Virus record (IMG/VR): IMGVR_UViG_3300027736_001324
Coordinates: 62,001-126,000 of that record
DNA: 64,000 bases
Reading direction: 5' to 3' (one strand)
The stretch's first letter is position 1. Each line of letters starts with the position of its first letter. Positions 15,708 to 32,586 of this stretch are shown one piece after another. Made by a program: the position numbers and the translations under genes. Under the pieces are notes generated by a model. That model saw nothing but the letters and a program-made list of their open reading frames with translations. It did not search any database and was not told where the DNA came from.

Positions 15708-16039
15708 CCGAAGAAGATTATATTATTATTTGGGAAGCACCTAAATTAATACCGCCGGAGTATAGATTATATTATGATGACAAGGGTAAAGTAATTTGCT
15801 ATTCAGGAGATAAATCGGTAGAGGGCAAGTACATTGTTATTGATGCACAAACTTTTGTTGAAGCAAGACCTGATCTAGTGGTTATCGATGAAAAACTATC
15901 CCGTGCTAGACCAAACGCAATGGTAAGTAAATTGATGCCTGACGATAGTGAAGGGGTCACTTGTCATCCAGAAGATATGAGTATAATAGTTGATGATGCC
16001 AATCACATTAAATGGAAATTAAATATATATGAACTCTAA
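15704..16039 (+). CDS. Hypothetical protein
   Basis: Overlaps both neighbours, consistent with translational coupling. Confidence 0.65.
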   Translation: MTEEDYIIIWEAPKLIPPEYRLYYDDKGKVICYSGDKSVEGKYIVIDAQTFVEARPDLVVIDEKLSRARPNAMVSKLMPDDSEGVTCHPEDMSIIVDDANHIKWKLNIYEL

Positions 16040-21036: not shown

Positions 21037-21052
21037 CGTAACTGAAAGTAAT

Positions 21053-21850
21053 ATGATTAATCACTTATATACTAATGGTTGTAGCTGGACAGCAGGCAAC
21101 GGAATTGATTTTGATCCATTATTAGCACATATACGTTACCCAGAAAAATATAATTATTTAAATAAATTAAATTGGCCCAGTCAACTAGCAGATCACTTAA
21201 ACATTCTTTTTACTAATGAAGGTATGGGAGCCGGAAGTAATAAAAGAATAATTCGTACAACTTACGATTTTTTAAGAAATTATCCCAAGCAAGAATATAA
21301 AAATTTACTGGTAGTGTTGGGATGGACATCAGTTGATCGTAGTGAAATGTATTTCAAAGAAAATGAAAATTTAAAAGGCTGGTGCATGTTTAATGCATCT
21401 CAGCCTGCAAGTAGTCATGGTTTACTATTTCGTCCAAATTTCTCATCAAACTTTTTGGCTAGCATGGATCAATGGCAAAAACAATATATTACTGATTTTT
21501 TTGATGAATATCCTAATTATTCATATTATTTTCAAGAAATGTATTTAATGAGTAATTTGCTAGAAAATTTAGGAATTAAATATATATTCTTTAGTAGTTT
21601 GCCATGGAAAAATACAATATATAGCGCAGAAAATATTTTAGAATTATTTGAACAAGAAATCAAAGAACTCAAAAAACCAAATATTTTGCAAACAAGAGAG
21701 TGTGATGATTCATTAAATGTAATGTCAAATTTTTGTTTGAAAAATAATTTACCAATGGCACCGGATAATCATCCAATGATTGAAGGACATGCTAAATGGG
21801 CTATGCATTTATTCAATGAAATTAAAGGTATTTATCCAAATGACATTTAA
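21053..21850 (+). CDS. SGNH/GDSL-like hydrolase or acyltransferase
   Basis: 'NGCSWT' block I, 'GAGSN', 'GWTSVDR', C-terminal 'DNHP'. Confidence 0.7.
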   Translation: MINHLYTNGCSWTAGNGIDFDPLLAHIRYPEKYNYLNKLNWPSQLADHLNILFTNEGMGAGSNKRIIRTTYDFLRNYPKQEYKNLLVVLGWTSVDRSEMYFKENENLKGWCMFNASQPASSHGLLFRPNFSSNFLASMDQWQKQYITDFFDEYPNYSYYFQEMYLMSNLLENLGIKYIFFSSLPWKNTIYSAENILELFEQEIKELKKPNILQTRECDDSLNVMSNFCLKNNLPMAPDNHPMIEGHAKWAMHLFNEIKGIYPNDI

Positions 21851-22724
21851 ATTAATAACAAACGGTGATAGTTGGACTTTTGGTAGTGAAATAGCTGATC
21901 CAAAATTAGTGAGTAAATATATAGACAAAAAACATGTTACGGAATTTGATCATTTTCCAGAAAATGATTCTTACAGAATTACAAAAATTTGGCCCACATT
22001 CATGAGTAAACTTGTGGATTGTGAGGTAATTAATTTATCCTGGCCTGCTGATGATAACGGATCTATCCTTAGGCGAACTATAAATTATATAACCAATACA
22101 TATATTGCAAATAATATTCCAATGAATGATTTATTTGTAATAATTGGATGGAGTAGCCCTGAACGTAATTCATTCTGGTATAAGGATGAATCTATGACAA
22201 GGCCATTTAGATTATGGCCGCAGAATAACCATTTTGATGCAAAGCCCCAAGAAAAGTTTTGGGATTTATATACTAGATACTTATGGAACGCTGAAGAATA
22301 CATGCCCAGGTATGTATTAGATGTATTACAATTTCAAAATTTTTGTAAGGCTCATGATATTAAATGGATGTGCTTTAATAGCTTTTATCAAACCCCTAAT
22401 AGTAATATTGAAGATTGGAATGACTTAGATGTTTCCGCAGAATTAAAAAATTTACAAAATAAACTCTCCGGGTATCAATATCAATCTACAACTGATATGT
22501 TACGCCGGTATGATCAAATAGATTATCAAACACTTTGGAAAACAATTGATCCTATTCGTTTTTATAAGAAAGATCAGCCTTGTAATACTTTTAAGAGTTA
22601 TATTGAAAACGTTGAACCTAAAATTGAACCGGTGTTCAATGGGTGGCATCCTAGTCCTGCTTCACATGAAATGTGGGCATACGAATTAGTAAATTATATT
22701 ACAACTAATAATTTAATAAAATGA
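21840..22724 (+). CDS. SGNH/GDSL-like hydrolase or acyltransferase, paralog
   Basis: 'NGDSWT', 'GWSSPER', 'GWHP'. The ATG at 21840 is the likely start rather than 21780. Confidence 0.7.
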   Translation: MTFKLITNGDSWTFGSEIADPKLVSKYIDKKHVTEFDHFPENDSYRITKIWPTFMSKLVDCEVINLSWPADDNGSILRRTINYITNTYIANNIPMNDLFVIIGWSSPERNSFWYKDESMTRPFRLWPQNNHFDAKPQEKFWDLYTRYLWNAEEYMPRYVLDVLQFQNFCKAHDIKWMCFNSFYQTPNSNIEDWNDLDVSAELKNLQNKLSGYQYQSTTDMLRRYDQIDYQTLWKTIDPIRFYKKDQPCNTFKSYIENVEPKIEPVFNGWHPSPASHEMWAYELVNYITTNNLIK

Positions 22725-22739
22725 AGCATTATTGTGTAA

Positions 22740-24041
22740 TTATTTGAACTTGACATTCATCGAACAGGCGCCTGCATTTGACCAACAACCGCCGGTGTAG
22801 GCAACAAACGCTCCAGAAGTAGTGGGTTTAATTTGTGCCGAATATGGCTTTAACGTAACGCTAGGGTTATAAAAAGTATGTATAACACTGGCAGTAACTG
22901 TATCAGTTGAGTATTTAATAATAGCCCATTCTACTCCTTCTATTGGTACTCCTGCCCACCCGTCAGTAACGTAGAAATAAAAATACCCATTATCGTATAC
23001 AACATCTAGCGCGGTGCTATATCTAGTGCCATGAGAAGTTGATAATGGCATGATAAATTTTTTAATAGTTGACCAATCAAAACCTCCTTTTTTGTCCCCC
23101 TTGACCCAAATCGTAAATGACTCTTTAGACAAAATCAAATCCAATCGACCATCAATTGGAATTACCATGAGGTTCCACATTATATTTAAATCTGGCATTG
23201 AAGAAGATTTTGGAATTATTTTGGTATCTTGTTTAAATGTACCGTCGCCATTCCCCAACAAAACTGCCACACTATCAACTCCGCTATTAGAATCGGGGAA
23301 AATAGTATTACCAAAAACATTAATAGTTACTATATCAATATTTCCGTCACCGTTTATATCGGCTGCTGCTGCTTGGTGAGCGTATATGTTAAATGGAACT
23401 TCTACTCGTTTGTACGTATTGTCTTTTTGGCTTAAAAAAATAATTTGATTACTACTCTTATAATTTATTAATTCGGACATAGAAAATCCAAAATTATAGA
23501 AATCATTGTCAACCCCACTACATGAAATATAAACATCAGGTTTACCGTCATTGTTGAAATCCGCGGTCATAGAATAACTTGCTGATATACAAGTTGCCCT
23601 ATCTGAGTTCGTCTTTAATAATTCGTTTGTTCTATCTCGCCACTTTCCATTAATATCCTGACTAAGAAAATAAGCCACCCCTGGCGCATCAGGTAAATTT
23701 TCAATACCGTACTTATTGGTAGCCCGCATAGATGAAACGAAAGCTGAATATTTCCCTTCTTGAAAAAAATCCCCAAATGTAACAGACCTTTCATTTGAAT
23801 CTAATTCGTCGGAATATACTTTTGGTATTCCTAAATTACGTACTCCGGGCATTTGAGTTTGATCAAAATTAATTGAGTTTTTATTTTCGTAAGAAGTACC
23901 AAATACAGCAAACGGTACTATTTTGGCAGGTATATTAGCTGGCGCAGTAGTATTACTAATAGAACCGCCCCCGCCCCCACCCCCACACGCAACTAATGCA
24001 AAAATGGAATATGCTATTGCTGTATACTTGATATAGTTCAT
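22740..24041 (-). CDS. Lipoprotein with FG-GAP/VCBS-like Ca-binding repeats
   Basis: Lipobox 'LVA-C' followed by poly-Gly; 'ADFNNDGKPD', 'ADINGDGNID', 'GNGDGTF'. Confidence 0.8.
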   Translation of the reverse strand: MNYIKYTAIAYSIFALVACGGGGGGGSISNTTAPANIPAKIVPFAVFGTSYENKNSINFDQTQMPGVRNLGIPKVYSDELDSNERSVTFGDFFQEGKYSAFVSSMRATNKYGIENLPDAPGVAYFLSQDINGKWRDRTNELLKTNSDRATCISASYSMTADFNNDGKPDVYISCSGVDNDFYNFGFSMSELINYKSSNQIIFLSQKDNTYKRVEVPFNIYAHQAAAADINGDGNIDIVTINVFGNTIFPDSNSGVDSVAVLLGNGDGTFKQDTKIIPKSSSMPDLNIMWNLMVIPIDGRLDLILSKESFTIWVKGDKKGGFDWSTIKKFIMPLSTSHGTRYSTALDVVYDNGYFYFYVTDGWAGVPIEGVEWAIIKYSTDTVTASVIHTFYNPSVTLKPYSAQIKPTTSGAFVAYTGGCWSNAGACSMNVKFK

Positions 24042-24067
24042 ACGAATTTCACTATGTTAAATAACGT

Positions 24068-24096
24068 ATTATACTGTATTTCTGCAATAAAGTCAA
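24068..24096 (-). promoter_or_regulatory. sigma70-type promoter of the lipoprotein gene
   Basis: Minus strand TTGACT-17 nt-TATAAT. Confidence 0.7.
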
Positions 24097-24125
24097 GTGT
24101 CTCGGGTTGCACACTAAATAATACT

Positions 24126-24905
24126 ATGAAAATTGCAGTATGTTTTTGGGGACAAATAAGAACCGGTATACATTCGCATCCGAGTATATTATCTTATTTT
24201 GATGGATTATTGGGCAATATAGATTTTTTTACACACACATGGGATACGGAAACAATTTCTTATTGTGAAATAAATGAAAATCCCATGCTTCCAGATTATC
24301 AGTCATTAAAAGAAAAAATATATAATGACTTGTCAACCTTTCAAATTGAAGTGCCAAAGGAAAAATTGAATAATTTTTTAAATATATATCAGCCAAAAAG
24401 ATTTAAAATTGACAATCCACTCAATTTTAAATTTAGTTTACCGGCGCATTATAGAAGCAGATATGAAGTCAATTTGCTGAAACAAGATTATGAAAAAAAT
24501 AATAATTTTGAGTATGATGTAGTTATTAGTATGCGCCCAGACCTTATATTTAATTCTTCTACTAAATTAAGTGCTGATTTAAATAAAGTAAATTTAAATG
24601 GTACTAATATTTACAATCGACACCATACTGATTTAGAAAACAAAGAAGAATTGATTGAAAGTTTATTTATTATAGGAAATTCAAAAAACATGGATTTGTT
24701 TTCCAGCTTTAAAACTTGCGATACAAACACGGGGGAAGATACACAACGATTGGATTATAAATATTCAACCAGTCGAGGATTAAATTTGAAAAGAATAATT
24801 AACTATGACTTTAGGGTGTTTCGATATTATAATAAATTTATGTTTGATATGGGAATATCATTTGATCAAATGATACAAAATTTTTATCTAGGTAAAATAA
24901 TATGA
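24126..24905 (+). CDS. Putative glycosyltransferase, same family, paralog 4
   Basis: MKIAVCFWGQIR...FTHTW...YDVVISMRPD. The start at 24126 matches the paralog N-termini and follows TAAATA-N5. Confidence 0.6.
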   Translation: MKIAVCFWGQIRTGIHSHPSILSYFDGLLGNIDFFTHTWDTETISYCEINENPMLPDYQSLKEKIYNDLSTFQIEVPKEKLNNFLNIYQPKRFKIDNPLNFKFSLPAHYRSRYEVNLLKQDYEKNNNFEYDVVISMRPDLIFNSSTKLSADLNKVNLNGTNIYNRHHTDLENKEELIESLFIIGNSKNMDLFSSFKTCDTNTGEDTQRLDYKYSTSRGLNLKRIINYDFRVFRYYNKFMFDMGISFDQMIQNFYLGKII

Positions 24906-25729
24906 GAATTGCAGTATGTTTTAGTGGTATGGTTAGGACTGCCAACTATGTTACCCCCAATCTATTAAATTATTTTGGAGATTTACTTCCTAATATTGAT
25001 TTTTTTATGCATACATGGGATGTAACACAACATAAACAATACACTCAGGGTGCAATGGGAGTGCTATCACACAACTACAGACAATGTCCAATGGAACCTA
25101 GTTATCCAATAGTATGTACGATTACAAATGACTATAAAAATTTTAAAAAAATAAAAATTGAATCATATTCAGTTCACTGTCAGTCGTATGTTCGTTTTCC
25201 ACTGTGGTATTCATGGGCCAAAAGTATAGAGTTAGCAAAAGAATATGAAAAAGAATATAATTTTACATATGATGTAGTATTAAAAATGAGACCGGAAATG
25301 ATTTTTCCTGCAAAAAGTACACTGCAACAGGAAATAGATAATTTTTTAATTAATCCTGAAATATTTTATGTTATGGGAGGCGATGACACCCGTTTAAATG
25401 ATGTATATTTTTTATCATCTTCACTAAACATGTCTACTGCTACTAACATAATACATAACACAACCCATTGGAAAAACAATGAATTTAATATGCATCTTTT
25501 AAGTAATAATATTAAATATTCACAAGTTTATAGACCAGCATATGCTATATACAGAGAAGAATGTGTTGGAGTTTCTCCAATGGATTGGTTAGGATGTCAT
25601 GTAGTTGAAACGTATTATTACTCTCCAAAAGAAACATTTGAGATATATTGCAGACAACAAAATTTTTTAACTAAATTTGTAGAACTATACGAATTTTTAA
25701 TGAAAAAAACAAAAAATGAAATTAATTAA
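24902..25729 (+). CDS. Putative glycosyltransferase, same family, paralog 5
   Basis: MRIAVCFSGMVR...FMHTW...YDVVLKMRPE. Confidence 0.6.
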   Translation: MRIAVCFSGMVRTANYVTPNLLNYFGDLLPNIDFFMHTWDVTQHKQYTQGAMGVLSHNYRQCPMEPSYPIVCTITNDYKNFKKIKIESYSVHCQSYVRFPLWYSWAKSIELAKEYEKEYNFTYDVVLKMRPEMIFPAKSTLQQEIDNFLINPEIFYVMGGDDTRLNDVYFLSSSLNMSTATNIIHNTTHWKNNEFNMHLLSNNIKYSQVYRPAYAIYREECVGVSPMDWLGCHVVETYYYSPKETFEIYCRQQNFLTKFVELYEFLMKKTKNEIN

Positions 25730-26855
25730 CAGGAACACTGATGTAATCACTAATAGTGCAAATCTTGAAGATTTACATGCTGTCACGGATGTTCCTATAT
25801 TGATGAGTTGTACAGCAGAAAAAGAATCAACTGATATTAAGAAAGATTTAATTTGGCAAATAAGTAAAGACTCCGGGATCATACAATTAAAAAATCTCAT
25901 CCCATTGAATGTGCTATATTCCGTGCCTCATAGCGGCACAACAGGTGGAATGTGGTTACAACATCATCAAGAATTTTCTAAATTCTTAAGTAAATTCAAC
26001 CCTACCTCAGTGTTAGAAATTGGCGGAGCACATGGTATATTGGCTACTGATTATTTGAAAAATAATATGATTCCCTGGACTATAATTGAACCTAATCCCT
26101 GCCCAATAGATAAGTGTCTGGCTAAATTTATTAAAAGATTTTTTGATGATAAGTTTTCTGTTAACGAAATTAACGAAAAAATTGACACAATAGTACATAG
26201 TCATGTGTTTGAACATGTTTATGACCCGACGGAATTTATGCAAAACATTTCAAATATAATGCATAACGGTAATAAATTAATATTTACCTTGCCCAATCTA
26301 CAAATTATGTTAGAAAACAAATATACTAACTGTATAAATTTTGAACATACTATTTTCTTGTCTGAACCGTACATAGAATACTTATTATCAAAATTTGGGT
26401 TTCGGGTCATAGAAAAAACATACTTTAGCAATCATAGCATTTTTTATTCAACTGTCAGAGATGATACGGTTGCCCCGTTTGAATTAGATCCCAATCTGTA
26501 TGAACAGAACAAACAACTGTACTTGGACTATGTAAAATATTATGAGGATCTTATAATAGAATTAAATAATAAATCAAAGGATACTACTCTTCCCATTTAT
26601 TTGTTTGGGGCACATGTGTTCTCGCAATATTTGTTAACATTAGGATTGGATAGCACTAAAATTAATAGTATCTTGGATAATGATCCAAAGAAACACGGCA
26701 AGCGTTTATATGGCACTGGTTTGAAAATTCAATCACCTAGTGTACTAAGCAGCGTAGAACCAATGATTGTTATTTTAAAAGCAGGGTTTTATAATGAAGA
26801 AATTAAACAAGATATATTGAAAAACATAAATCCAAATATAATATTTTGGGAATAA
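25716..26855 (+). CDS. Class I SAM-dependent methyltransferase (sugar C-methyltransferase-like)
   Basis: 'VLEIGGAHG', 'HSHVFEH', C-terminal 'LFGA...DND..KHGK.LYG'. Confidence 0.75.
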   Translation: MKLINRNTDVITNSANLEDLHAVTDVPILMSCTAEKESTDIKKDLIWQISKDSGIIQLKNLIPLNVLYSVPHSGTTGGMWLQHHQEFSKFLSKFNPTSVLEIGGAHGILATDYLKNNMIPWTIIEPNPCPIDKCLAKFIKRFFDDKFSVNEINEKIDTIVHSHVFEHVYDPTEFMQNISNIMHNGNKLIFTLPNLQIMLENKYTNCINFEHTIFLSEPYIEYLLSKFGFRVIEKTYFSNHSIFYSTVRDDTVAPFELDPNLYEQNKQLYLDYVKYYEDLIIELNNKSKDTTLPIYLFGAHVFSQYLLTLGLDSTKINSILDNDPKKHGKRLYGTGLKIQSPSVLSSVEPMIVILKAGFYNEEIKQDILKNINPNIIFWE

Positions 26856-26857
26856 AG

Positions 26858-27310
26858 ATGATCACAAAAGATAAAAAGTTAGTTAAAAAACACTGGGGAC
26901 AGGAAGAATGGTTTGCAGATGGAGTAGCTACCCCATTTGCATTGAAACGTATATTGTTCTTAGCTGGGAACAGAACAAGTCTACAAGTGCATCAATATAA
27001 GTTTGAAACAACTTTTGTATTGTCTGGCACTGGCAAATTATATAAGTCTAAAGAACCATTGGATATAGAAAATTTCCTACATGTAGGAATGACCTCTAAG
27101 CAAGTTGAAGAATATGAAGCAACGTTTGATGTACTAGATTTGCATGAGGGTGTTTTATTCGACCTCAGCCCAGGATACGTTCATCGTGTTGTGGCTACTA
27201 CCGACTTAACTTTTATCGAAGCTAGCACTTGTGAATTGGATGATGTATTTCGTTTACAAGATGATGGTGGAAGAACACACGGGCGCATAAGCTACGAACA
27301 TGAAAATTAA
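26858..27310 (+). CDS. Cupin-domain protein (mannose-6-phosphate isomerase type II-like)
   Basis: 'V.K.WG.E', 'TSLQVH..K.ET', 'PGYVHR', 'DDVFRLQD'. Confidence 0.75.
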   Translation: MITKDKKLVKKHWGQEEWFADGVATPFALKRILFLAGNRTSLQVHQYKFETTFVLSGTGKLYKSKEPLDIENFLHVGMTSKQVEEYEATFDVLDLHEGVLFDLSPGYVHRVVATTDLTFIEASTCELDDVFRLQDDGGRTHGRISYEHEN

Positions 27311-28829
27311 TACAGTAATTATACCTACTGCAGGTACAGGTAGTAGAATGGGTAACTATACAAAGAATCTCAACAAAGCATTATTGCCCTATAAAAATAA
27401 ACCAGTGATATCACATATCATTGACAGTTTCCCCCAAGACACAAAATTTATTCTACCAGTTGGTTACTTAGCAGATCAAATCAAAGACTTCTGTAAAATA
27501 GCATATGCTGATAGAGATATTGAATTTGTTCAGATAGATGATTATCTTAGTAGCAAATCAGGCACTTCATATACATTGCGACATTGTAGAGACAAAGTAA
27601 ACGCACCGTTTTGGTATGTGCCGTGTGATACTTATTTTAATGAATCAGTTGTTGACAAAGTAAACGAAAGTAATTGTTACTTTGTAAAAAAAGTTCCAGA
27701 GAAAGACAGCTATCTCTATACTATGTTTGATGTAGATACCAACAAAAATATAACTGAGATAACATTTAAAAAACACACCCCAGAATCATATGAAGCCTTT
27801 ACTGGGTTAATGTACATACATGATTATGTAGAATTCTTTGATAGTTTGGAAACAATCAATTCAACTGAATTAATTTATTCCATACAGTTAGGTGACAAAG
27901 TAGCTAAGTTGGACACTTGGCAAGACTTTGGAGATCCAGTCAACTATCAAACTGAATTGGGGAAAAGTCAAAAGTTTGACTTTAGTAAAAAAGATGAACT
28001 AACCTATATCTGTAACAATCGTGTAGTCAAATGGTGGATAGATGATGCTACCCCAAAAAAGAAATATATTAAGACATTAAAAAATCCCTCTGTATTTCCT
28101 GCTAACTGTCAACACATTGGCAACTTCATGGCTTACGATTACTTTGATGGCCAAACACTATATGAGTATAATAACCCAGTAGCATTTACTTCATATCTTA
28201 ATTGGCTAAAAGATGAAGTTTGGTTGCCAGTTGATGCGGATATTACCAGTGCTGCAACTGAATTCTATAAAAACAAAACACTAGCACGAGTTAATAAGTT
28301 TTTAGAAAAGTACCCAGACCTCAAACAAATTAACTTTATTGATGGTATAAAAGTTAATGATTATAGTTACTACTTGAATAAGATTGATTGGGACTATTTA
28401 AGCACTACCACATTACCAGGGTTTGTGCATGGGGATTTACATTTTGATAATACTGTTATCAATGATGAGGGTAAATTTAAAGTGATAGATTGGAGACATG
28501 AATTTGCTAATATAGTAGAGTATGGGGATATCTATTATGACCTAGCTAAACTAGCAGGTGGATTTATAATCAACTATGCTAACATCAAAGAACATAACTT
28601 CAATATTGAAATAGATAATGATAATGTCACACTAGCTATCCCTAGTGTAGACCATGTTAATGTTTATCAACGTCAACTTAAAGAATTCGTAATAAGTCAG
28701 GGGTACGATTACAAAAAAGTACAAACGCTAATTCCAATTATATATTGGAATATGAGTCCATTACATACTGCGCCATTTGATGTATTCTTATGGTACTTGG
28801 GTATTAAATTGTTCCAAGAATTAGAATGA
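27300..28829 (+). CDS. Nucleotidyltransferase fused to a choline/aminoglycoside kinase-like phosphotransferase
   Basis: N-terminal 'PTAGTGSRM...NKALLP'; C-terminal 'HGDLHFDN', 'VIDW', 'GDIYYDLAKL'. Confidence 0.8.
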   Translation: MKINTVIIPTAGTGSRMGNYTKNLNKALLPYKNKPVISHIIDSFPQDTKFILPVGYLADQIKDFCKIAYADRDIEFVQIDDYLSSKSGTSYTLRHCRDKVNAPFWYVPCDTYFNESVVDKVNESNCYFVKKVPEKDSYLYTMFDVDTNKNITEITFKKHTPESYEAFTGLMYIHDYVEFFDSLETINSTELIYSIQLGDKVAKLDTWQDFGDPVNYQTELGKSQKFDFSKKDELTYICNNRVVKWWIDDATPKKKYIKTLKNPSVFPANCQHIGNFMAYDYFDGQTLYEYNNPVAFTSYLNWLKDEVWLPVDADITSAATEFYKNKTLARVNKFLEKYPDLKQINFIDGIKVNDYSYYLNKIDWDYLSTTTLPGFVHGDLHFDNTVINDEGKFKVIDWRHEFANIVEYGDIYYDLAKLAGGFIINYANIKEHNFNIEIDNDNVTLAIPSVDHVNVYQRQLKEFVISQGYDYKKVQTLIPIIYWNMSPLHTAPFDVFLWYLGIKLFQELE

Positions 28830-29524
28830 AACAATTTTATAGTCTAAGTCAATATCCTGGCAAAACCGGAGAAACTTACTATCGTAAGTTTTTTAATTTA
28901 AAGAATTTGCCACACTCTTACAATGCATTAAAATGCGAAAATATAGTTGATAGTGTTACTGAATTAAAAAATATTAAAGCTAGTGGGTTCAGTGTCAGTA
29001 TGCCCTACAAGGCATCAGTCATACCTTTACTTGATGAAGTGGATAATTTAGTTACACAATTCAATAGTTGTAACACAGTAGTGAACGTCGACGGAAAGTA
29101 TATTGGTTACAATGCTGATTACTATGGGGCAATACATGTACTAAAAACTATCCTAGAACATGAACCAATTAACATATTGGGCAACGGTGCAATGGGCAAT
29201 ATGTTTAAAAAAATACTAGGTTCTAGGGCTAACATCTACAGTCGTTCATTGGGCAATTGGGACCAAATACAATCATTATCTGGAACTATAATAAACTGTA
29301 CTAGTTTAGGTACCTCTACTAAGGATAGTCCCTTCATTAAGTTGCCAAATATAAGCCATGTGATTGACTTGGCTATGAATGACAATGATTTAAAAAAACA
29401 AACCATCTCATCTGATATTAAATATATAGGCGGAAAAGAGTTTTACCAGCAGCAATTCAAAAAACAATTTGAAATTTACACCGGTATAACATTAAGCCAA
29501 TCAGAACTTGAAGATGATAATTAA
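28826..29524 (+). CDS. Shikimate dehydrogenase (AroE)-like oxidoreductase
   Basis: 'GFSVSMPYK', 'CNTV', 'GYNAD', 'ILGNGAMG', 'INCTSLG'. Confidence 0.75.
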   Translation: MKQFYSLSQYPGKTGETYYRKFFNLKNLPHSYNALKCENIVDSVTELKNIKASGFSVSMPYKASVIPLLDEVDNLVTQFNSCNTVVNVDGKYIGYNADYYGAIHVLKTILEHEPINILGNGAMGNMFKKILGSRANIYSRSLGNWDQIQSLSGTIINCTSLGTSTKDSPFIKLPNISHVIDLAMNDNDLKKQTISSDIKYIGGKEFYQQQFKKQFEIYTGITLSQSELEDDN

Positions 29525-29999
29525 TAAATTAGTTTTAGACGTTGACGGAGTACTTAACACCGGGCATATTTTATATAGCAGTCAGGGTAAGATGTATAAA
29601 GTCTTTGGTCCACACGACAAAGATGGATTCAAAATAATAAAAAAATATCTAAATGATATTACCTTTATCACAGCAGATGTGACTGGCTGGGATATAACCT
29701 ACGCCCGAATAGTAAACGATTGGAAGTATGATCCTTCACAATTAATATTGGTTACAGAAGAAGATCGTATGAGATGGTTTGAAAAGAATTGTGATTTTGA
29801 AACTACAGCATATATAGCAGACGGATACAATGATGCCCCTATACTAGATAGAGTTAAAGTTGGCATTGCACCCAAATCAGCAAGAATAGAAGCAAGATCA
29901 GCAGCAATATATGTAACACCTTCAAAAGCAGGACAAGGTGCTGTGTTAGATGCTTGCTTATACTTAGAAAGATTAATTAATGGACTTGAAGAAATTTAA
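29514..29999 (+). CDS. HAD phosphatase, KdsC-like
   Basis: 'LDVDGVL', 'K.F..HD..G', 'YIADGYND', 'AGQGAV'. Confidence 0.8.
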   Translation: MIINKLVLDVDGVLNTGHILYSSQGKMYKVFGPHDKDGFKIIKKYLNDITFITADVTGWDITYARIVNDWKYDPSQLILVTEEDRMRWFEKNCDFETTAYIADGYNDAPILDRVKVGIAPKSARIEARSAAIYVTPSKAGQGAVLDACLYLERLINGLEEI

Positions 30000-30996
30000 A
30001 TTGGGCGTGGGCCCTATGAGTCCAGAAGTAGTTGATATTTGTTTGGAATACAGCAAGGTACATAATTTTCCAATTATGATTATTGCTAGTAGAAATCAAG
30101 TTGATGCTAATAATGGATATTCATTTACCACTGAGAAATTAGTAGATTTTGTCAAATCTAATACAAACTATGATCCTGAAAGAATACTTATATGCAGAGA
30201 TCATTGCGGACCATACTACGGTGATGTTGACACTGGCTTATCAGTAGAGGATGCACTAAAGAATTGTATCAACACAATTGATTCTGACGTTAAGAATGGA
30301 TTTAATTTGATACATGTGGATATCAGCAGAGTAGCTAAAGAAGAAAGATACACAATAGCACACGAAATTATCAATTACATTTTGAAATTGAATCCCAATA
30401 TTATGTTAGAATTTGGTAGTGAGGACAATCTTAGCGTAGAAGAAAACAACAATCAAATACATTATGATGTTGAGTTTAGTAGACGCTATCTAAATCAGAT
30501 TAAATTTGTTGTTGGTCGTACAGGTAGTCTCACTAAACATAAACAAGTGGGTCATTTTGATGTGGAAGATAATATCAAACTAGCAGAGGTTATACACAAG
30601 CATGGATTCTTATTTAAAGAACATAATGCTGATTACTTAACTGAACAAGATATTGTATTAAGAAAACAAGCCGGAGTAGATTCGTTAAATATTGCACCAC
30701 AATTAGGAGTGGTACATACTAATGTACTTGTTAAGTTAGGTAAAGAATTTGAGGATGAGTATAATACATTTAAGAAATCTGTAATTGAAAAAGAAGTATG
30801 GAAGAAATGGATTACTCCTGAGATAACAGATGACGAAACTAAGTTATCAGTAAGCGGACATTATTTCTTAAACACAGTTGAAGCCAAACAGTTGTTAGAA
30901 AAAATTGATATAGCAAAGTTTAAAAATGTTTTGAAAACAGAGATATTTGAAGTACTTGATATATATAGAAAAGGACTTGGCAATGAGCATACTTAA
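29980..30996 (+). CDS. GatZ/KbaZ-family (tagatose-bisphosphate aldolase subunit / tagatose-6-P epimerase-like) TIM-barrel enzyme
   Basis: 'IASRNQVD...GY', 'RDHCGP', 'GFNLIHVD', 'KEHNADY', 'NIAPQLG'. Confidence 0.7.
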   Translation: MDLKKFKLGVGPMSPEVVDICLEYSKVHNFPIMIIASRNQVDANNGYSFTTEKLVDFVKSNTNYDPERILICRDHCGPYYGDVDTGLSVEDALKNCINTIDSDVKNGFNLIHVDISRVAKEERYTIAHEIINYILKLNPNIMLEFGSEDNLSVEENNNQIHYDVEFSRRYLNQIKFVVGRTGSLTKHKQVGHFDVEDNIKLAEVIHKHGFLFKEHNADYLTEQDIVLRKQAGVDSLNIAPQLGVVHTNVLVKLGKEFEDEYNTFKKSVIEKEVWKKWITPEITDDETKLSVSGHYFLNTVEAKQLLEKIDIAKFKNVLKTEIFEVLDIYRKGLGNEHT

Positions 30997-31108
30997 AAAA
31001 ATTAAATACTTCATTGTAGAACGATTGTTTGGTAAAATTACCAGAGAATTGCGCTATAGAAAAAGATTAAAAGAATTACGCAAACGAGACCCGTTTATTT
31101 ACAAATGA
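30983..31108 (+). CDS. Small basic 41-aa protein ending RKRDPFIYK, not in the ORF track
   Basis: AAGGA RBS; ATGA-coupled to the carbamoyltransferase gene. Confidence 0.65.
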   Translation: MSILKKIKYFIVERLFGKITRELRYRKRLKELRKRDPFIYK

Positions 31109-32586
31109 ACTATATAGGTATAAGTGCCGGTTTTCATGACGCTGCAATCAGCGTAGTTGATGACCATGGCAACATCTTGTTTGCTGGACATAGTGAACGC
31201 TATAGTAAGAATAAGCATGACAAAGATGTATGTGAAGAATTATTAACGGATGCATTAAAGCACACTAATTCATCATACTTAGAGTATCATTACTATGAAC
31301 GCCCGTGGTTAAAGTCATTACGTCAATTACGCACTGGTGAAGGCTTTACTTGGCCGTCATGGGAAAAGATATTAGGTAGTACATATCATCAGATGGGTAC
31401 ACCTAAAATACATACACATAGTCATCATCTATGTCATGCGGCTGCAGGATTTCAAACAAGTCCATTTGAAGATGCCACTGTTGTTGTGATTGATGCTATA
31501 GGAGAATTTGATACTATCACTATCTGGGATGCTTGGTACGATTTCTCAACGGGCAAAGCACAATACAAAAAACTATGGAGTCTTAAATATCCAGATAGCA
31601 TTGGATTATTCTATTCAGCAATGACTGAACGAGTTGGACTACGCCCATTAGATGAAGAATACATTCTAATGGGTATGGCTGCGTACGGAGAACCTAATCA
31701 TGTTGCTGATATGATTAATGAGTTAGTAGATAAAAAAGATATATTAACCTTCAAGCAAAATCTACACACTGGGGTTAGTAAAGATTTCTTAAAAGATGCT
31801 GATCCATTGGACATTGCTAGCAGTAGTCAACACTTAGTTGAGTACATGATTACTAGAGTAATGAGTAAAGCTAGAACATTGGGTCGTAGTAGAAATCTAG
31901 TATACGGCGGCGGGGTAGCATTGAATTGTTTAGCGAACAGACTATTAGGGAACTTCTATGAAAATATTTGGATTATGCCTAACCCTGGCGATGCGGGTAA
32001 TAGTCTCGGTGCAGCATGTCTTGGGCACAGTCGTAAAACTAATTGGACTGATGCTTTTCTTGGTCATAACATTCCTGGTAAGTATCCTGTTAACGGTTTA
32101 CTTGATGTGTTACTTACTGATAGGATTGTTGGTGTCGCTTCAGGACGAGCAGAGTTCGGCCCGAGAGCATTGGGAAATAGAAGTCTACTCGCAGACCCAA
32201 GAGGCGATGAAATTAAAGATAAAGTAAATGAGATTAAACGTAGACAAAAGTTTAGACCATTTGCTCCTGTCATATTAGAAGAATATGCTCATCAGTATTT
32301 TGAAATGCCTAAGCACTGGCATGATAGTAGATATATGCAGGTTATTAGTAAATGTAAATATCCTGAGAAATTCCCTGCTATTGCACATCACGATTGGACT
32401 AGTAGAGTACAAACTGTACCAAAAGATGGGTCTGGCATCAGAGAGTTATTAGAAAAATGGTATGTAATGACCGAATGCCCAATGTTATTGAACACAAGTT
32501 TAAACATACGTGGCGAGCCAATGGTCAACGACCATAGTGATGCTGATAGGTTTGAAAAACTATATGGAGTTAAGGTTTTGTCATAA
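31105..32586 (+). CDS. O-carbamoyltransferase (NodU/CmcH family)
   Basis: 'HDAA', 'ER...KH', 'HHLCHAA', 'GGVALNC', 'EFGPRALGNRS', 'RPFAP', 'LNTSLN.RGEP'. Confidence 0.92.
   Translation: MNYIGISAGFHDAAISVVDDHGNILFAGHSERYSKNKHDKDVCEELLTDALKHTNSSYLEYHYYERPWLKSLRQLRTGEGFTWPSWEKILGSTYHQMGTPKIHTHSHHLCHAAAGFQTSPFEDATVVVIDAIGEFDTITIWDAWYDFSTGKAQYKKLWSLKYPDSIGLFYSAMTERVGLRPLDEEYILMGMAAYGEPNHVADMINELVDKKDILTFKQNLHTGVSKDFLKDADPLDIASSSQHLVEYMITRVMSKARTLGRSRNLVYGGGVALNCLANRLLGNFYENIWIMPNPGDAGNSLGAACLGHSRKTNWTDAFLGHNIPGKYPVNGLLDVLLTDRIVGVASGRAEFGPRALGNRSLLADPRGDEIKDKVNEIKRRQKFRPFAPVILEEYAHQYFEMPKHWHDSRYMQVISKCKYPEKFPAIAHHDWTSRVQTVPKDGSGIRELLEKWYVMTECPMLLNTSLNIRGEPMVNDHSDADRFEKLYGVKVLS

What the first reader, a model, noticed from the sequence alone, without database searches (positions are those of the whole stretch)
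25716..30996. Unusual sugar-precursor sub-pathway: methyltransferase, cupin, nucleotidyltransferase-kinase fusion, AroE-like, KdsC-like and GatZ-like enzymes
Seen: six contiguous, mostly overlapping genes. Established: these families isomerise or epimerise, phosphorylate, dephosphorylate, reduce and nucleotide-activate sugars. AroE and GatZ homologs are out of their normal pathways here, since no other shikimate or galactitol genes lie in this window. Inference: a self-contained route to an unusual NDP-sugar or cyclitol donor for the adjacent GTs, with the AroE-like protein repurposed.
Basis: partly seen in the sequence, partly recalled or inferred. Interest (0 to 1): 0.6.

Follow-up and report, generated by a model that had tools for sequence, protein, structure and literature searches.

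The report
Rare-sugar activation cassette in jumbo phage
An uncultured giant phage carries a tightly packed block of sugar-pathway genes that also travels as a unit in hundreds of bacteria and archaea. It most likely builds and nucleotide-activates a still unidentified rare sugar, and its 'shikimate' and 'galactitol' look-alikes are repurposed parts of that route.

Summary
The six ORFs are real, at exactly the stated coordinates, all on the + strand, and every junction overlaps by 4-20 nt. The record is a 263.7-kb virus contig (terminase, ThyA, SSB), not a bacterial capsule locus.

The conserved unit is five genes: a type-II-PMI-like cupin, a nucleotidyltransferase-kinase fusion (NTK), an SdhL-class 'AroE-like' oxidoreductase, a KdsC-like HAD phosphatase and a GatZ-like Zn enzyme. 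They stay together in all 13 full-flank viral loci (KdsC in only 4 of them). They also stay together in 80 loci from very diverse Bacteria and Archaea, where they sit in polysaccharide loci. The methyltransferase (sugar 3-C-methyltransferase-like) and the carbamoyltransferase are accessories.

Three results argue for one pathway:
- The AroE-like gene is replaced by a FabG-like SDR in 16 loci and never co-occurs with it.
- Natural cupin-NTK and NTK-GatZ fusions exist.
- All genes are under purifying selection (dN/dS 0.07-0.17).

Best reading: a route from central ketose phosphates to a nucleotide-activated rare sugar. Its logic matches the ADP-heptose and lincomycin GDP-octose pathways, but the isomerase, kinase, C-C enzyme and oxidoreductase come from unrelated families. 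The identity of the sugar and the exact role of the reductase remain open. No curated family or searched paper describes the cassette.

The parts
25716..26855 (+). SAM-dependent methyltransferase related over its full length to NDP-sugar 3-C-methyltransferases (TylC3/TcaB9/KijD1 type). It is an accessory tailoring gene.
   Evidence: Pfam Methyltransf_23 plus Methyltransf_14. The family profile A7 matches PDB 4rv9, D-mycarose 3-C-methyltransferase, at E 1.2e-11 over residues 11-364, and also TcaB9 and KijD1. Present in 9 of 48 cellular and 1 of 13 viral full-flank loci, with up to 59% identity to cellular copies.
26846..27310 (+). Small cupin homologous to the type II phosphomannose-isomerase domain. 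Predicted metal-dependent aldose/ketose isomerase acting on the sugar phosphate or the free sugar.
   Evidence: hhalign of family profile A2 against the PMI domain of a Marinomonas ManC: probability 96.4%, E 1e-9, covering all motifs. Q47, H49, E54 and H113 are invariant. The AF2 model has pLDDT 90.8 with a cupin fold. The Legionella-MAG orthologue passes the Pfam PF01050 threshold.
27300..28829 (+). Bifunctional protein (NTK). Residues about 1-230 form a sugar-phosphate nucleotidyltransferase; residues about 230-509 form an APH/choline-kinase-fold kinase.
   Evidence: Pfam NTP_transf_3 plus APH. Invariant GxGxR...K, HGD...N and DW motifs. AF2 pLDDT 92. VIA Z 24.6 to LicC, 24.2 to G1P thymidylyltransferase, 21.8 to HddC; Z 16.9 to APH(4)-Ia and 16.6 to LicA. 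HMM against PDB gives G1P thymidylyltransferase as best hit, E 2.7e-9.
28826..29524 (+). SdhL-class (HI0607-like) member of the shikimate dehydrogenase family, shortened in the Rossmann domain. Predicted NADP(H)-dependent oxidoreductase acting on a sugar intermediate.
   Evidence: Family profile A4 matches 1npy (HI0607) at E 3e-81, against 2e-63 or weaker for genuine AroE. K62, D98, N83 and Q210 are invariant, and the AroE Tyr of DxxY is replaced. Mutually exclusive with a FabG-like SDR (0 of 47 against 16 of 33; Fisher p 4e-8). dN/dS 0.11-0.17.
29508..29999 (+). KdsC/YrbI-type (C0) HAD phosphatase. Predicted to remove the distal phosphate of the sugar (bis)phosphate intermediate.
   Evidence: TIGR01670 E 2.8e-16, below its cut-off. 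DxDG and GYND motifs are intact. Present in 42 of 48 cellular loci but only 4 of 13 viral loci. 84-90% identical in the closest viral loci.
29980..30996 (+). Short (338 aa) GatZ/KbaZ-like class-II-aldolase-fold Zn enzyme. Predicted retro-aldol/aldol catalyst (C4 epimerase or transaldolase-like) that makes the unusual ketose phosphate.
   Evidence: PF08013 at 58.3 bits. R73-D74-H75, E144, H215 and D218 are invariant, and E148 is kept in 23 of 24 sequences. D74/H75 align with GatZ Asp87/His88 and H215 with His257. By inspection of A3, not computed, the GTE Glu E148 corresponds to GatZ Glu171. It is the only PF08013 hit in the record and there is no GatY/FBA. NTK-GatZ fusions exist.
31105..32586 (+). 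NodU/CmcH-type O-carbamoyltransferase. A frequent downstream tailoring gene in the phage versions.
   Evidence: Pfam Carbam_trans_N and Carbam_trans_C, E 1e-38 to 1e-47. Follows GatZ in 9 of 13 viral full-flank loci but in only 2 of 48 cellular ones.
14168..25729 (.). Surrounding soluble 'glycan island'. It holds five DUF7796/phrog_13607 paralogues, two DUF6071 proteins carrying a GDS(W) motif, a radical SAM enzyme, other unknowns and one opposite-strand FG-GAP protein. These are the candidate users and tailoring enzymes of the product.
   Evidence: Pfam, PHROG and Atlas hits. The same families accompany the cassette in viral loci and occasionally in cellular ones (L101, L104). No TM-like segment in any ORF. 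The link to the cassette is by neighbourhood only.

Best explanation
The block is a phage-borne copy of an ancient, widely distributed and so far uncharacterised cassette. It converts a central ketose phosphate into a nucleotide-activated rare sugar.

Proposed order (inferred, not shown):
1. The GatZ-like Zn enzyme remodels a ketose phosphate by retro-aldol/aldol chemistry. This is either C4 epimerisation, as GatZ does on fructose-6-P, or transfer of the C3 unit onto another aldose phosphate to give a longer ketose.
2. The PMI-like cupin isomerises the ketose phosphate to the aldose phosphate.
3. The kinase half of NTK phosphorylates C1.
4. The KdsC-like phosphatase removes the distal phosphate. 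Steps 3 and 4 could run in the other order, through the free sugar.
5. The nucleotidyltransferase half of NTK makes the NDP-sugar.
6. The SdhL-class 'AroE-like' enzyme carries out an NADP(H)-dependent redox step on an intermediate, either a ketoreduction or an HldD-like epimerisation. It is not a shikimate-pathway enzyme.

The 3-C-methyltransferase-like protein and the carbamoyltransferase tailor the sugar. In the phage the island has no membrane proteins, so the donor probably serves soluble transferases that modify phage components.

Functionally this maps one-to-one onto the ADP-heptose route (GmhA, HldE, GmhB, HldD) plus the LmbR-type first step of GDP-octose synthesis. The isomerase, kinase, C-C enzyme and oxidoreductase belong to unrelated families.
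For: Shown:
- Exact ORFs with overlapping junctions.
- The block is conserved in 23 viral loci and in 80 cellular loci from many phyla. Full-flank counts: GatZ 46, cupin 46, KdsC 42, reductase 43 of 48.
- Cellular copies lie in polysaccharide loci with Wzx, Wzz, glycosyltransferases, ManC and PMM. In 15 loci a GT-A-like gene sits inside the cassette.
- Cupin-NTK and NTK-GatZ fusions exist.
- A classical SDR replaces the AroE-like gene in 16 loci and never co-occurs with it.
- Catalytic residues are invariant in all families.
- dN/dS is 0.07-0.17.
- The cupin is a type II PMI homologue.
- The NT domain is closest by HMM to sugar-1-P nucleotidyltransferases.
- The AroE-like family is closest to SdhL HI0607.
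- The record has no aro, gatY, kdsA or kdsB genes.

From the literature:
- GatZ/KbaZ are F6P-to-T6P C4 epimerases acting by Zn retro-aldol chemistry, and together with a phosphatase they yield tagatose (PMC11907403).
- The route LmbR transaldolase, LmbN isomerase, LmbP kinase, LmbK phosphatase, LmbO guanylyltransferase gives GDP-octose (PMC4351081, PMC5854111).

From my own knowledge: HldE is a kinase/nucleotidyltransferase fusion and HldD is an NADP-dependent epimerase.
Against: - No step has been tested biochemically.
- The order of steps, the nucleotide and the sugar are inferences.
- A redox-neutral route from ketose-P to NDP-aldose needs no reductase, yet the reductase is nearly universal. 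An SDH or FabG-type enzyme acting as an epimerase has no precedent that I know of.
- By fold, the two NTK halves resemble LicC and LicA (CDP-choline enzymes) about as well as they resemble sugar enzymes.
- KdsC-like is missing from 9 of 13 viral loci. Several of those carry a SnoaL-like ORF between NTK and AroE instead.
- The GatZ-family markers Glu44, Lys279 and Cys20 are not conserved here, so the GatZ-like chemistry may differ.
- The record is only an estimated 69% complete.
Confidence: 0.6

Rival explanations
1. The product is a CDP-activated alditol or other polyol, made by a Kennedy-type route. GatZ-like and the cupin set the stereochemistry of a ketose phosphate. The SdhL or SDR enzyme reduces it to an alditol phosphate. 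KdsC-like removes the phosphate. The LicA-like kinase re-phosphorylates, at the other end, and the LicC-like nucleotidyltransferase makes the CDP-alditol for phosphodiester-linked decoration.
For: - A near-universal NADP-type reductase means a net reduction, which an alditol explains simply.
- A phosphatase together with a kinase makes sense if the phosphate must move.
- The best structural neighbours of the two NTK halves include LicC (Z 24.6) and LicA (Z 16.6).
- Source names for the homologues read 'choline kinase' and 'CTP:phosphocholine cytidylyltransferase-like'.
- Known CDP-ribitol, CDP-glucitol and CDP-2-glycerol routes all contain a reductase (my own knowledge).
Against: - A PMI-like aldose/ketose isomerase would be superfluous if a stereospecific ketoreductase acted directly on the ketose, yet the cupin is present in 46 of 48 loci.
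- By HMM the NT domain ranks sugar-1-P nucleotidyltransferases above LicC.
- The transferase embedded in type A loci looks GT-A/GT2-like, not TagF- or LicD-like.
- No TagF- or LicD-type phosphotransferase was seen among the frequent neighbour families scanned against Pfam.
Confidence: 0.2
2. The sugar, for example a 6-deoxyhexose, is assembled bottom-up by an aldol reaction. GatZ-like condenses DHAP with a keto-aldehyde or with a reductase-made aldehyde, giving a ketose-1-phosphate. SdhL reduces the extra keto group, as the SDH-family 5-ketofructose reductase does. KdsC-like removes the 1-phosphate. The cupin isomerises the free ketose to an aldose. NTK then adds the anomeric phosphate and the nucleotide.
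For: - Every enzyme, including the reductase and the phosphatase/kinase pair, has a necessary role.
- An SDH-family enzyme that reduces 5-ketofructose has a solved structure (7cok).
- In SDR-type loci the SDR gene sits between GatZ and the cupin.
- Cupin sugar isomerases that act on free ketoses appear among the structural neighbours.
Against: - No gene for supplying the aldehyde partner, such as methylglyoxal synthase, is conserved near the cassette.
- The GatZ-like metal site is of the GatZ type (His, Glu, His), which works on C1-unphosphorylated ketose-6-phosphates.
- The cupin is homologous to PMI, which acts on 6-phosphates.
Confidence: 0.1
3. The pathway is the same, but in the phage the NDP-sugar is used to hypermodify DNA, as arabinosyl- or pentosyl-hydroxymethylcytosine is in T-even-like phages, rather than proteins or glycans.
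For: - Distant NTK homologues (22-23% identity over 82% of the query) occur in Klebsiella phage Marfa and Shewanella phage Thanatos.
- The Thanatos one is TH1_060, which lies next to dCMP hydroxymethyltransferase in the DNA-pentosylation cluster. Its RB69 homologue is presumed to make UDP-arabinose.
- The phage island has no membrane proteins.
Against: - No dCMP hydroxymethylase-like gene lies next to the cassette.
- The neighbouring ThyA matches ordinary thymidylate synthase families.
- The island lies between giant structural-type ORFs and includes a carbamoyltransferase, SGNH-like proteins and many paralogous transferase-like proteins, which suggests a complex glycan.
- In cells the same cassette serves exported polysaccharides.
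Confidence: 0.07
4. The genes are independent auxiliary metabolic genes doing their textbook jobs: shikimate dehydrogenase, tagatose/galactitol catabolism, Kdo-8-P phosphatase and CDP-choline synthesis.
For: The family names from Pfam, NCBIfam and source annotations.
Against: - All NCBIfam scores are far below the curated cut-offs.
- The record holds no partner genes of any of those pathways.
- The block is strictly conserved across phyla, with gene fusions and SDR displacement.
Confidence: 0.02

Closest known systems
ADP-L-glycero-beta-D-manno-heptose pathway (GmhA isomerase, HldE bifunctional kinase/nucleotidyltransferase, GmhB HAD phosphatase, HldD NADP-dependent epimerase)
   Same: The set of activities is the same: ketose-phosphate isomerase, a fused kinase and nucleotidyltransferase, a HAD phosphatase that removes the distal phosphate, and one NADP-dependent oxidoreductase. 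The end product is likewise a nucleotide sugar for surface glycans. HAD and nucleotidyltransferase superfamily membership is shared in a broad sense; the related GDP-heptose enzyme HddC is a structural neighbour of the NT domain (Z 21.8).
   Different: The isomerase is a PMI-like cupin, not a SIS domain. The kinase has an APH/choline-kinase fold, not PfkB. The domain order is NT then kinase. The phosphatase is the KdsC/YrbI type, not the GmhB type. The oxidoreductase is SdhL or a FabG-like SDR, not an extended SDR. There is an extra GatZ-like step at the start. The mapping rests on my knowledge of the heptose pathway, not on a test.
[quoted passage not shown]
   Same: A C-C-bond enzyme first builds an unusual ketose omega-phosphate from F6P or S7P plus R5P. 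Isomerase, kinase, phosphatase and nucleotidyltransferase then follow (PMC4351081, PMC5854111). A KdsC-type enzyme, whose known substrates carry an 8- or 9-phosphate, would fit such a long sugar.
   Different: LmbR is a class I transaldolase, whereas the enzyme here has a Zn class-II-aldolase fold of the GatZ type. No enzyme is orthologous. The lincomycin route belongs to an antibiotic cluster in Streptomyces, whereas this cassette sits in polysaccharide loci and phages. There is no evidence yet that the sugar here has more than six carbons.
E. coli GatZ/KbaZ (fructose-6-P to tagatose-6-P C4 epimerases) combined with the phosphatase HxpA
   Same: The Pfam family (PF08013) is the same. The catalytic Asp-His pair and the second His are conserved and aligned, and the Glu ligand corresponds by inspection. 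The pairing with a sugar-phosphate phosphatase is also shared (PMC11907403).
   Different: The protein has 338 aa, not 420, and only the first 130 residues match the Pfam model. The family markers Glu44, Lys279 and Cys20 are replaced by a hydrophobic residue, Asn and Met. There is no GatY partner and no galactitol genes. NCBIfam scores are about 10% of the cut-off.
Haemophilus influenzae HI0607 (SdhL, shikimate dehydrogenase-like; PDB 1npy)
   Same: It is the best solved relative of the AroE-like family (E 3e-81, full length). It shares the N-terminal motif, the catalytic Lys/Asp and the loss of the AroE DxxY tyrosine. From my own knowledge, SdhL oxidises shikimate only very slowly and its physiological role is unknown.
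   Different: The phage protein is shorter (232 aa, about 20 residues missing from the Rossmann domain) and scores below the NF009202 cut-off. Whether HI0607 itself lies near such a cassette was not tested.
LicC/LicA (and LicCA fusions) of the CDP-choline pathway
   Same: The closest folds for the two NTK halves include LicC (Z 24.6, rmsd 2.3 over 212 residues) and LicA (Z 16.6). The NT-then-kinase order is the same as in LicCA fusions (my own knowledge).
   Different: NTK is invariably linked to sugar-phosphate enzymes, which a choline pathway does not need. By HMM it ranks sugar-1-P nucleotidyltransferases higher.
NT-kinase-like fusion of T-even-like phages (Shewanella phage Thanatos TH1_060, RB69 ORF052_053c) in the arabinosyl/pentosyl-hmC DNA modification clusters
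   Same: It is phage-encoded, has the same N-terminal nucleotidyltransferase plus C-terminal kinase-like architecture, and is 22% identical over 82% of NTK. It is presumed to make an activated pentose (PMC12838424).
   Different: The relationship is very distant. Those clusters have no GatZ-, cupin-, SdhL- or KdsC-like partners, and their target is DNA.
NDP-sugar 3-C-methyltransferases (TylC3, TcaB9, KijD1)
   Same: The methyltransferase family matches them over the full length (E 1.2e-11) and carries the C-methyltransferase C-terminal domain.
   Different: Only one Cys (C32) is invariant, where my recollection of TcaB9 is a four-Cys zinc site. No 4,6-dehydratase that would supply the usual 4-keto substrate is in the cassette. 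The regiochemistry, and even whether methylation is on C or O, is unknown.

Membership tests
AroE shikimate dehydrogenase (EC 1.1.1.25) | Score above the curated equivalog cut-off (TIGR00507, 200 bits, and related NCBIfam models) | tested here: not met
   74.1 bits against 200.2 for TIGR00507. The best model, NF009202, gives 84.8 against 306.
AroE shikimate dehydrogenase (EC 1.1.1.25) | Catalytic Lys/Asp dyad and the NT/Q hydroxyl-binding residues | tested here: met
   K62, D98, N83, T84 and Q210 are invariant in alignment A4.
AroE shikimate dehydrogenase (EC 1.1.1.25) | Carboxylate-binding Tyr of the DxxY motif, and both serines of the SxS motif | tested here: not met
   The Tyr is replaced by Val, Ala or Met in alignments with AroE of M. 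jannaschii and A. aeolicus. The second Ser is variable. The role of these residues is from my own knowledge.
AroE shikimate dehydrogenase (EC 1.1.1.25) | Genomic company of other shikimate-pathway genes | tested here: not met
   No EPSP synthase, DHQ synthase or DAHP synthase in the 263.7-kb record. The record is an estimated 69% complete.
SdhL class of the SDH family (HI0607-like) | Closest solved relative is HI0607, over the full length | tested here: met
   Profile A4 against 1npy gives E 3.1e-81 over positions 2-262, against 2.4e-63 for the best AroE. The phage protein alone is weaker.
GatZ/KbaZ (PF08013) | Pfam gathering threshold and full-length match | tested here: inconclusive
   58.3 bits exceeds 26.7, but only residues 14-131 match profile positions 23-141 of 420. 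The NCBIfam equivalogs reach 38-49 bits against cut-offs of 569-707.
GatZ/KbaZ (PF08013) | Zn ligands His88, Glu171 and His257 and the catalytic Asp87 | tested here: met
   D74-H75 and H215 are invariant and aligned to the GatZ residues. The Glu corresponds to the GTE Glu (E148) by inspection. GatZ numbering is from PMC11907403.
GatZ/KbaZ (PF08013) | Family markers Glu44, Lys279 and Cys20 | tested here: not met
   The aligned positions hold Ile or another hydrophobic residue, N237 and M13.
GatZ/KbaZ (PF08013) | Partner GatY/KbaY aldolase or galactitol/GalNAc genes | tested here: not met
   No PF01116 match in the record and none seen in related loci.
KdsC (Kdo-8-P phosphatase, YrbI family) | Curated cut-off of TIGR01670 or NF007019 | tested here: not met
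   59.8 against 106.95, and 48.7 against 208.
KdsC (Kdo-8-P phosphatase, YrbI family) | HAD catalytic motifs (DxD...; GDxxxD) | tested here: met
   LDVDGVL and ADGYND are present.
KdsC (Kdo-8-P phosphatase, YrbI family) | Company of KdsA and KdsB | tested here: not met
   No PF00793 or PF02348 match in the record.
Type II phosphomannose isomerase domain (PF01050) | Homology across the whole domain, with the Q-x-H...E...H metal ligands | tested here: met
   hhalign gives 96.4% probability, E 1e-9, against the PMI domain of a bona fide ManC. Q47, H49, E54 and H113 are invariant. The window protein alone is below the Pfam threshold (18.9 against 23.6), while the L038 orthologue is above it (30.4).
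Type II phosphomannose isomerase domain (PF01050) | Activity on mannose-6-P/fructose-6-P | not testable with these tools
   Needs an enzyme assay.
Sugar-1-phosphate nucleotidyltransferase (RmlA/GalU/HddC type) | N-terminal GxGxR...K signature and fold | tested here: met
   Motifs are invariant. HMM E 2.7e-9 to 3hl3. Z 21-25 to many members. No NCBIfam cut-off is reached.
LicC/LicA CDP-choline enzymes | Specific recognition of choline or phosphocholine | not testable with these tools
   Only fold similarity was obtained. The conserved sugar-enzyme neighbours argue against choline.
ADP-heptose / GDP-octose pathways | Orthology of the isomerase (SIS), kinase (PfkB or LmbP type) and first enzyme (transaldolase) | tested here: not met
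   The families found are a cupin, an APH fold and a GatZ-like protein. The cassette therefore works like these pathways but is not a member of them.
NDP-sugar 3-C-methyltransferase (TcaB9/TylC3) | Full-length homology including the C-terminal domain | tested here: met
   E 1.2e-11 over residues 11-364 against 13-393 of 4rv9. Pfam Methyltransf_14.
NDP-sugar 3-C-methyltransferase (TcaB9/TylC3) | N-terminal four-Cys zinc site | tested here: inconclusive
   Only C32 is invariant in A7. The four-Cys site of TcaB9 is recalled from memory.

The most novel reading that the evidence does not exclude
The cassette is an undescribed, domain-spanning pathway found in Bacteria, in Archaea including DPANN, in CPR bacteria and in jumbo phages. 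It would lead to a nucleotide sugar not yet in the textbooks, possibly a higher-carbon (C7-C9) or C4-epimeric aldose. The pathway would have been built by convergent recruitment of a GatZ-type Zn enzyme, a PMI-type cupin, an APH-type kinase fused to a nucleotidyltransferase, a KdsC-type phosphatase and an SdhL-type oxidoreductase. If so, it gives the SdhL class of 'shikimate dehydrogenases' its first physiological role, and it shows that phages carry a complete de novo sugar pathway to glycosylate their own components.
Probability: 0.35. Interest if true: 0.8.

Novelty: new variant of a known kind. Interest (0 to 1): 0.62.

Why it matters
Nucleotide-sugar pathways define which glycans microbes and their viruses can display. 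If this reading is right, it matters in five ways.

1. It adds a widespread route that is currently annotated only as choline kinase, shikimate dehydrogenase, tagatose aldolase subunit and Kdo phosphatase. Those mis-annotations affect hundreds of genomes, including CPR bacteria, DPANN archaea, SAR11, SAR86 and Thaumarchaeota.
2. It offers a testable physiological role for the SdhL class of SDH-like enzymes. To my knowledge that role has been open since the HI0607 structure.
3. It is an example of a whole pathway logic (isomerase, kinase/NT fusion, HAD phosphatase, NADP enzyme) re-invented with unrelated folds.
4. It shows a jumbo phage carrying a self-sufficient sugar supply line inside a membrane-free glycan island. 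That bears on virion glycosylation and on phage-host recognition.
5. The enzymes could be useful for making rare NDP-sugars.

Tried and rejected
- **DNA similarity to known phages.** It gave only an 80-nt match to cyanophage S-SKS1. An early idea that the record is a T4-like cyanophage was dropped. The record is an IMG/VR jumbo-phage fragment with weak ties to other jumbo phages.
- **Single-sequence and profile searches of the cupin against PDB sequences.** These were uninformative. Foldseek gave only generic cupins: CapF, ectoine synthase and sugar isomerases, TM 0.5-0.6. The decisive link to type II PMI came from hhalign.
- **Fold searches of NTK.** They could not separate sugar-1-P from alcohol-phosphate specificity.
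- **NCBIfam scans.** Neither the phage proteins nor the cellular ones reach any curated cut-off.
- **Literature searches.** Searches for the gene combination, for SdhL and for talose/tagatose-6-P nucleotide sugars found no description of the cassette. Subscription journals are mostly not covered.
- **hhalign of the embedded GT-A-like family** against the phage's unknown neighbours found no relation.
- **Promoter and terminator scan** was at chance level.
- **A simple 'F6P to T6P to talose-6-P to NDP-talose' scheme** was considered and set aside as incomplete, because it gives the near-universal reductase no role.
- **A cyclitol product** was rejected for lack of any sugar-phosphate cyclase.
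- **A RuBisCO-inhibitor (CA1P-like) idea** was rejected because the cassette is common in non-phototrophs and ends in a nucleotidyltransferase.

Full report
**Observation.**
- 25716-26855 (379 aa)
- 26846-27310 (154 aa)
- 27300-28829 (509 aa)
- 28826-29524 (232 aa)
- 29508-29999 (163 aa)
- 29980-30996 (338 aa)

Their junctions overlap by 10, 11, 4, 17 and 20 nt, and a 108-nt gap precedes the next gene.
- Methyltransf_23 plus the C-methyltransferase C-terminal domain
- a weak cupin/MannoseP_isomer match
- NTP_transf_3 plus APH kinase
- Shikimate_dh_N
- a KdsC/YrbI-type HAD
- GatZ_KbaZ-like

None of the six reaches an NCBIfam curated cut-off. The next gene, 31105-32586, is a clear NodU/CmcH-type carbamoyltransferase.

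**Context.** The window is bases 62001-126000 of a single 263,709-bp contig. It is an IMG/VR virus record, linear, with an estimated completeness of 69%.
- The window encodes a terminase large subunit, thymidylate synthase, an SSB, a phage ATPase and a virion protein.
- It also encodes a porin, a PstS-like binding protein and a 2OG-Fe(II) oxygenase.
- Two giant ORFs without Pfam hits flank the sugar region: at least 3599 aa ending at 10800, and 2014 aa at 32595-38639.
- Between them lie about 20 small soluble proteins: five DUF7796/phrog_13607 paralogues, two DUF6071 proteins with a GDS(W) motif, a radical SAM enzyme and an FG-GAP protein on the other strand.
- None of these ORFs has a TM-like segment.

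So this is a jumbo phage, not a bacterial capsule locus.

**Out of their usual pathways.** The whole record has no class II FBP/GatY aldolase, EPSP synthase, DHQ synthase, DAHP/Kdo8P synthase or CMP-Kdo synthetase. The same searches ring in 11-14 of the control genomes, and the single PF08013 hit in the record is the gene under study.

**Co-occurrence elsewhere.**
- *Protein database.* The fusion protein (NTK) has 617 relatives in the protein collection. They carry only generic source names such as choline kinase, NDP-sugar pyrophosphorylase and thiamine-kinase-like.
- *Metagenomic contigs.* Contigs carrying relatives of 60-65% identity keep cupin-NTK-AroE-(KdsC)-GatZ-(carbamoyltransferase). 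One of them is a 351-kb contig with a T4 gp9/10-like giant protein.
- *Viral loci.* A scan of IMG/VR gave 23 loci with the same order, including two distant ones at 37% NTK identity. The 'Marine virus AG-345-E15' record keeps NTK and GatZ adjacent.
- *Cellular loci.* A scan of one genome per prokaryotic species found at least 293 relatives. The best 80 loci come from Gemmatimonadota, Planctomycetota, Bdellovibrionota, Legionella, Pelagibacteraceae, SAR86, a Marinomonas isolate, many CPR bacteria, Thaumarchaeota and DPANN archaea.
- *Counts.* Of the 48 cellular loci with at least 5 kb on both sides, 46 have the GatZ-like gene, 46 the cupin, 42 the KdsC-like gene, 33 the AroE-like gene, 9 the methyltransferase and 2 the carbamoyltransferase.
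- *Gene orders.* Two orders recur: KdsC-GatZ-(GT-A-like)-cupin-NTK-AroE, and KdsC-AroE-NTK-GatZ-cupin.
- *Neighbours.* In a Legionella MAG and in Marinomonas colpomeniae the neighbours are Wzx, Wzz, a PglF-like dehydratase, ManC, PMM, UDP-sugar dehydrogenase, FkbM methyltransferase and NeuB. These are polysaccharide loci.

**Evidence that the genes form one pathway.**
1. Natural fusions exist: cupin-NTK (L035, L042) and NTK-GatZ (L058, L064).
2. A classical FabG-like SDR of about 240 aa is present in 16 of 80 loci. All 16 lack the AroE-like gene: 0 of 47 against 16 of 33, Fisher p 4e-8, although the loci are not phylogenetically independent. The SDR is embedded in the operon, usually between GatZ and the cupin. 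A redox enzyme is thus present in 43 of 48 complete loci, and two unrelated folds can supply it. This is the strongest argument that the AroE-like protein is a pathway oxidoreductase and not a shikimate enzyme.
3. All phage genes, including the shortened AroE-like one, show dN/dS of 0.07-0.17 against two related viral loci.

**The individual enzymes.**

*Cupin.*
- Alignment A2 has invariant Q47, H49, E54 and H113, together with KPWG and DDV-R motifs.
- hhalign against the C-terminal PMI domain of a genuine ManC gives 96.4% probability and E 1e-9 across the whole domain.
- The AF2 model (pLDDT 90.8) is a cupin whose structural neighbours are uninformative.
- I therefore read it as a type-II-PMI-like metal-dependent aldose/ketose isomerase.

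*GatZ-like.*
- R73-D74-H75, H112, D114, E144, K213-H215, D218-Y219 and N237 are invariant, and the GTE Glu (E148) is kept in 23 of 24 sequences.
- D74/H75 and H215 align with GatZ Asp87/His88 and His257. E148 matches Glu171 by inspection of A3.
- E. coli GatZ and KbaZ were recently shown to be F6P-to-T6P C4 epimerases working by Zn retro-aldol/aldol chemistry. With the phosphatase HxpA they give tagatose (PMC11907403).
- The GatZ markers Glu44, Lys279 and Cys20 are replaced here, so the substrate or outcome may differ.

*AroE-like.*
- The family profile hits H. influenzae HI0607 (SdhL) at E 3e-81, ahead of all AroE structures. The SDH-family 5-ketofructose reductase 7cok is also a clear relative.
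- The catalytic K62 and D98 are kept, and the AroE DxxY tyrosine is lost.
- An Arg at the NR(T/S) position points to NADP(H), by inference. The motif is NRx in cellular members and SRS in the phage protein.

*KdsC-like.* The HAD motifs are intact.

*NTK.*
- Motifs of both halves are invariant. The AF2 model has pLDDT 92.
- The NT half is closest by HMM to a G1P thymidylyltransferase, then UGPase, then LicC.
- By structure it is equally close to LicC, UGPase, RmlA-like enzymes, GMPPB, MurU and HddC (Z 22-25).
- The kinase half resembles APH(4)-Ia and choline kinases (Z 15-17).

*Methyltransferase.* It is a full-length homologue of sugar 3-C-methyltransferases.

**How it most likely works.** The activity set is a C-C/epimerase enzyme acting on a ketose phosphate, an aldose/ketose isomerase, a kinase fused to a nucleotidyltransferase, a HAD phosphatase and one NADP enzyme.
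- It maps function-for-function onto the ADP-L-glycero-D-manno-heptose pathway: GmhA, the HldE fusion, GmhB and HldD (my own knowledge).
- The GatZ-like step takes the place that the transaldolase LmbR holds in the lincomycin route. There LmbR, LmbN, LmbP, LmbK and LmbO convert F6P or S7P plus R5P into GDP-octose (PMC4351081 Table 2; PMC5854111).
- I therefore propose: ketose-P remodelling (GatZ-like), then isomerisation (cupin), then C1 phosphorylation (kinase half), then removal of the distal phosphate (KdsC-like), then NDP-sugar formation (NT half). One redox step (SdhL or SDR) and optional C-methylation and carbamoylation are added to this.

*What is shown:* the families, their conserved catalytic residues, their linkage, the fusions, the displacement and the purifying selection.

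*What is inferred:* the order of steps, the substrates, the nucleotide and the product.

A redox-balance argument matters here. A ketose-P-to-NDP-aldose route is redox-neutral, so the near-universal NADP enzyme must be one of three things:
- an epimerase-type catalyst, like HldD;
- evidence that the product is reduced, that is an alditol or a deoxy sugar;
- a reductase for an extra keto group introduced by the aldol partner.

This is why the CDP-alditol rival (favoured by the LicC/LicA-like folds) and the bottom-up aldol rival stay alive. Against the alditol rival stand the core PMI-like isomerase, the HMM ranking of the NT domain, and the GT-A-like transferase embedded in 15 cellular cassettes.

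**Phage-specific points.**
- KdsC-like is absent from 9 of 13 complete viral loci. Several of them, for example L016, carry a 112-aa SnoaL-like ORF between NTK and AroE instead. A host phosphatase may serve there.
- The carbamoyltransferase is typical of the viral versions (9 of 13).
- The island has no flippase, polymerase or polyprenyl-phosphate transferase. The target in the phage is therefore probably cytoplasmic: virion proteins, possibly the flanking giant proteins, or less likely DNA.
- The DNA idea comes from very distant NTK relatives in T-even-like phages. One is Thanatos TH1_060, next to dCMP hydroxymethyltransferase, whose RB69 homologue is presumed to make UDP-arabinose (PMC12838424).

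**Novelty.** No NCBIfam model names any cassette protein. Source annotations are generic. Eight literature searches found no description of the combination. The searched library lacks most subscription journals, so prior description cannot be excluded. The finding belongs to a known kind, a nucleotide-sugar biosynthesis cassette, but its enzyme composition is new. It has a very wide distribution and a phage copy, and it suggests a role for the SdhL class.

**Limits.** There is no biochemical evidence. The sugar is unidentified. The kinase domain was not folded alone. The cellular loci are mostly MAGs, although several lie on contigs of 0.4-1.9 Mb and one is from an isolate. Counts rest on tblastn at E of 1e-4 or better with at least 40% coverage, so divergent members may be missed.

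Noticed in passing
window 1-10800 and 32595-38639: Two giant + strand ORFs (at least 3599 aa, open at the window start, and 2014 aa) bracket the sugar island. The 2014-aa one has no Pfam hit; the other was not scanned. A Peptidase_G2 (tailspike intramolecular chaperone-like) protein lies at 11620-12870. These are possibly virion fibres and candidate glycosylation targets.
   Followed up: partly
window 18547-19323, 19310-20062, 20062-21036, 24054-24905, 24902-25729: Five paralogous soluble proteins of 250-324 aa share an N-terminal (K/R)IAVCFSGQxRT motif (phrog_13607, DUF7796; the Atlas name is 'capsular polysaccharide biosynthesis protein family', mostly viral). Homologues lie near the cassette in a few cellular loci (L101, L104, L076, L095). 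Their function is unknown.
   Followed up: partly
window 21053-21850 and 21780-22724: Two DUF6071 paralogues carry an N-terminal NGCSWT/NGDSWT motif resembling block I of SGNH/GDSL hydrolases. They are possibly glycan acyl-esterases or transferases. One of them accompanies the cassette in most viral loci.
   Followed up: no
window 16973-18550: A 525-aa radical SAM protein lies in the island and is conserved in the viral loci. B12-binding radical SAM enzymes also sit next to the cassette in 9 cellular loci (for example L032:2930-4594). They may be methylases or other tailoring enzymes.
   Followed up: no
window 22740-24041 (- strand): This is the only opposite-strand gene inside the island. It is a 433-aa FG-GAP repeat protein with no TM-like segment.
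   Followed up: no
window 39833-42636 and 51997-54175: Host-like genes are present: a 2OG-Fe(II) oxygenase, a Gram-negative porin, a PstS-like phosphate-binding protein, thymidylate synthase and a separate nucleotide-sugar epimerase (53159-54175). The porin and PstS suggest a Gram-negative, phosphate-limited host.
   Followed up: no
L016:11520-11858 (and the same about 340-nt slot in L007-L025): Viral loci that lack the KdsC-like gene carry a 112-aa SnoaL/NTF2-like ORF between NTK and the AroE-like gene. Whether it replaces a step or adds one is unknown.
   Followed up: partly
L035:7290-9584, L042:7245-9548, L058:7986-10697, L064:7911-10817: Natural gene fusions occur in cellular genomes: cupin-NTK in the first two loci and NTK-GatZ in the last two.
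   Followed up: yes
L076, L079, L081, L082, L084, L086, L087, L093, L095 (DPANN and other archaeal loci): These loci carry an additional stand-alone copy of the nucleotidyltransferase half, about 210 aa, just upstream of or near the full NTK gene.
   Followed up: no
L028-L053 type A loci, e.g. L038:6363-7187 and L038:7234-8001: Type A cellular cassettes contain a 274-aa GT-A/GT2-like gene between GatZ and the cupin. Their cupin also carries an extra N-terminal domain of about 110 residues with unknown function.
   Followed up: partly
window 26658-26737: The only DNA-level match of the region to a cultured phage is an 80-nt stretch, 79.8% identical, inside the methyltransferase gene. It matches a hypothetical protein of Synechococcus phage S-SKS1.
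   Followed up: no
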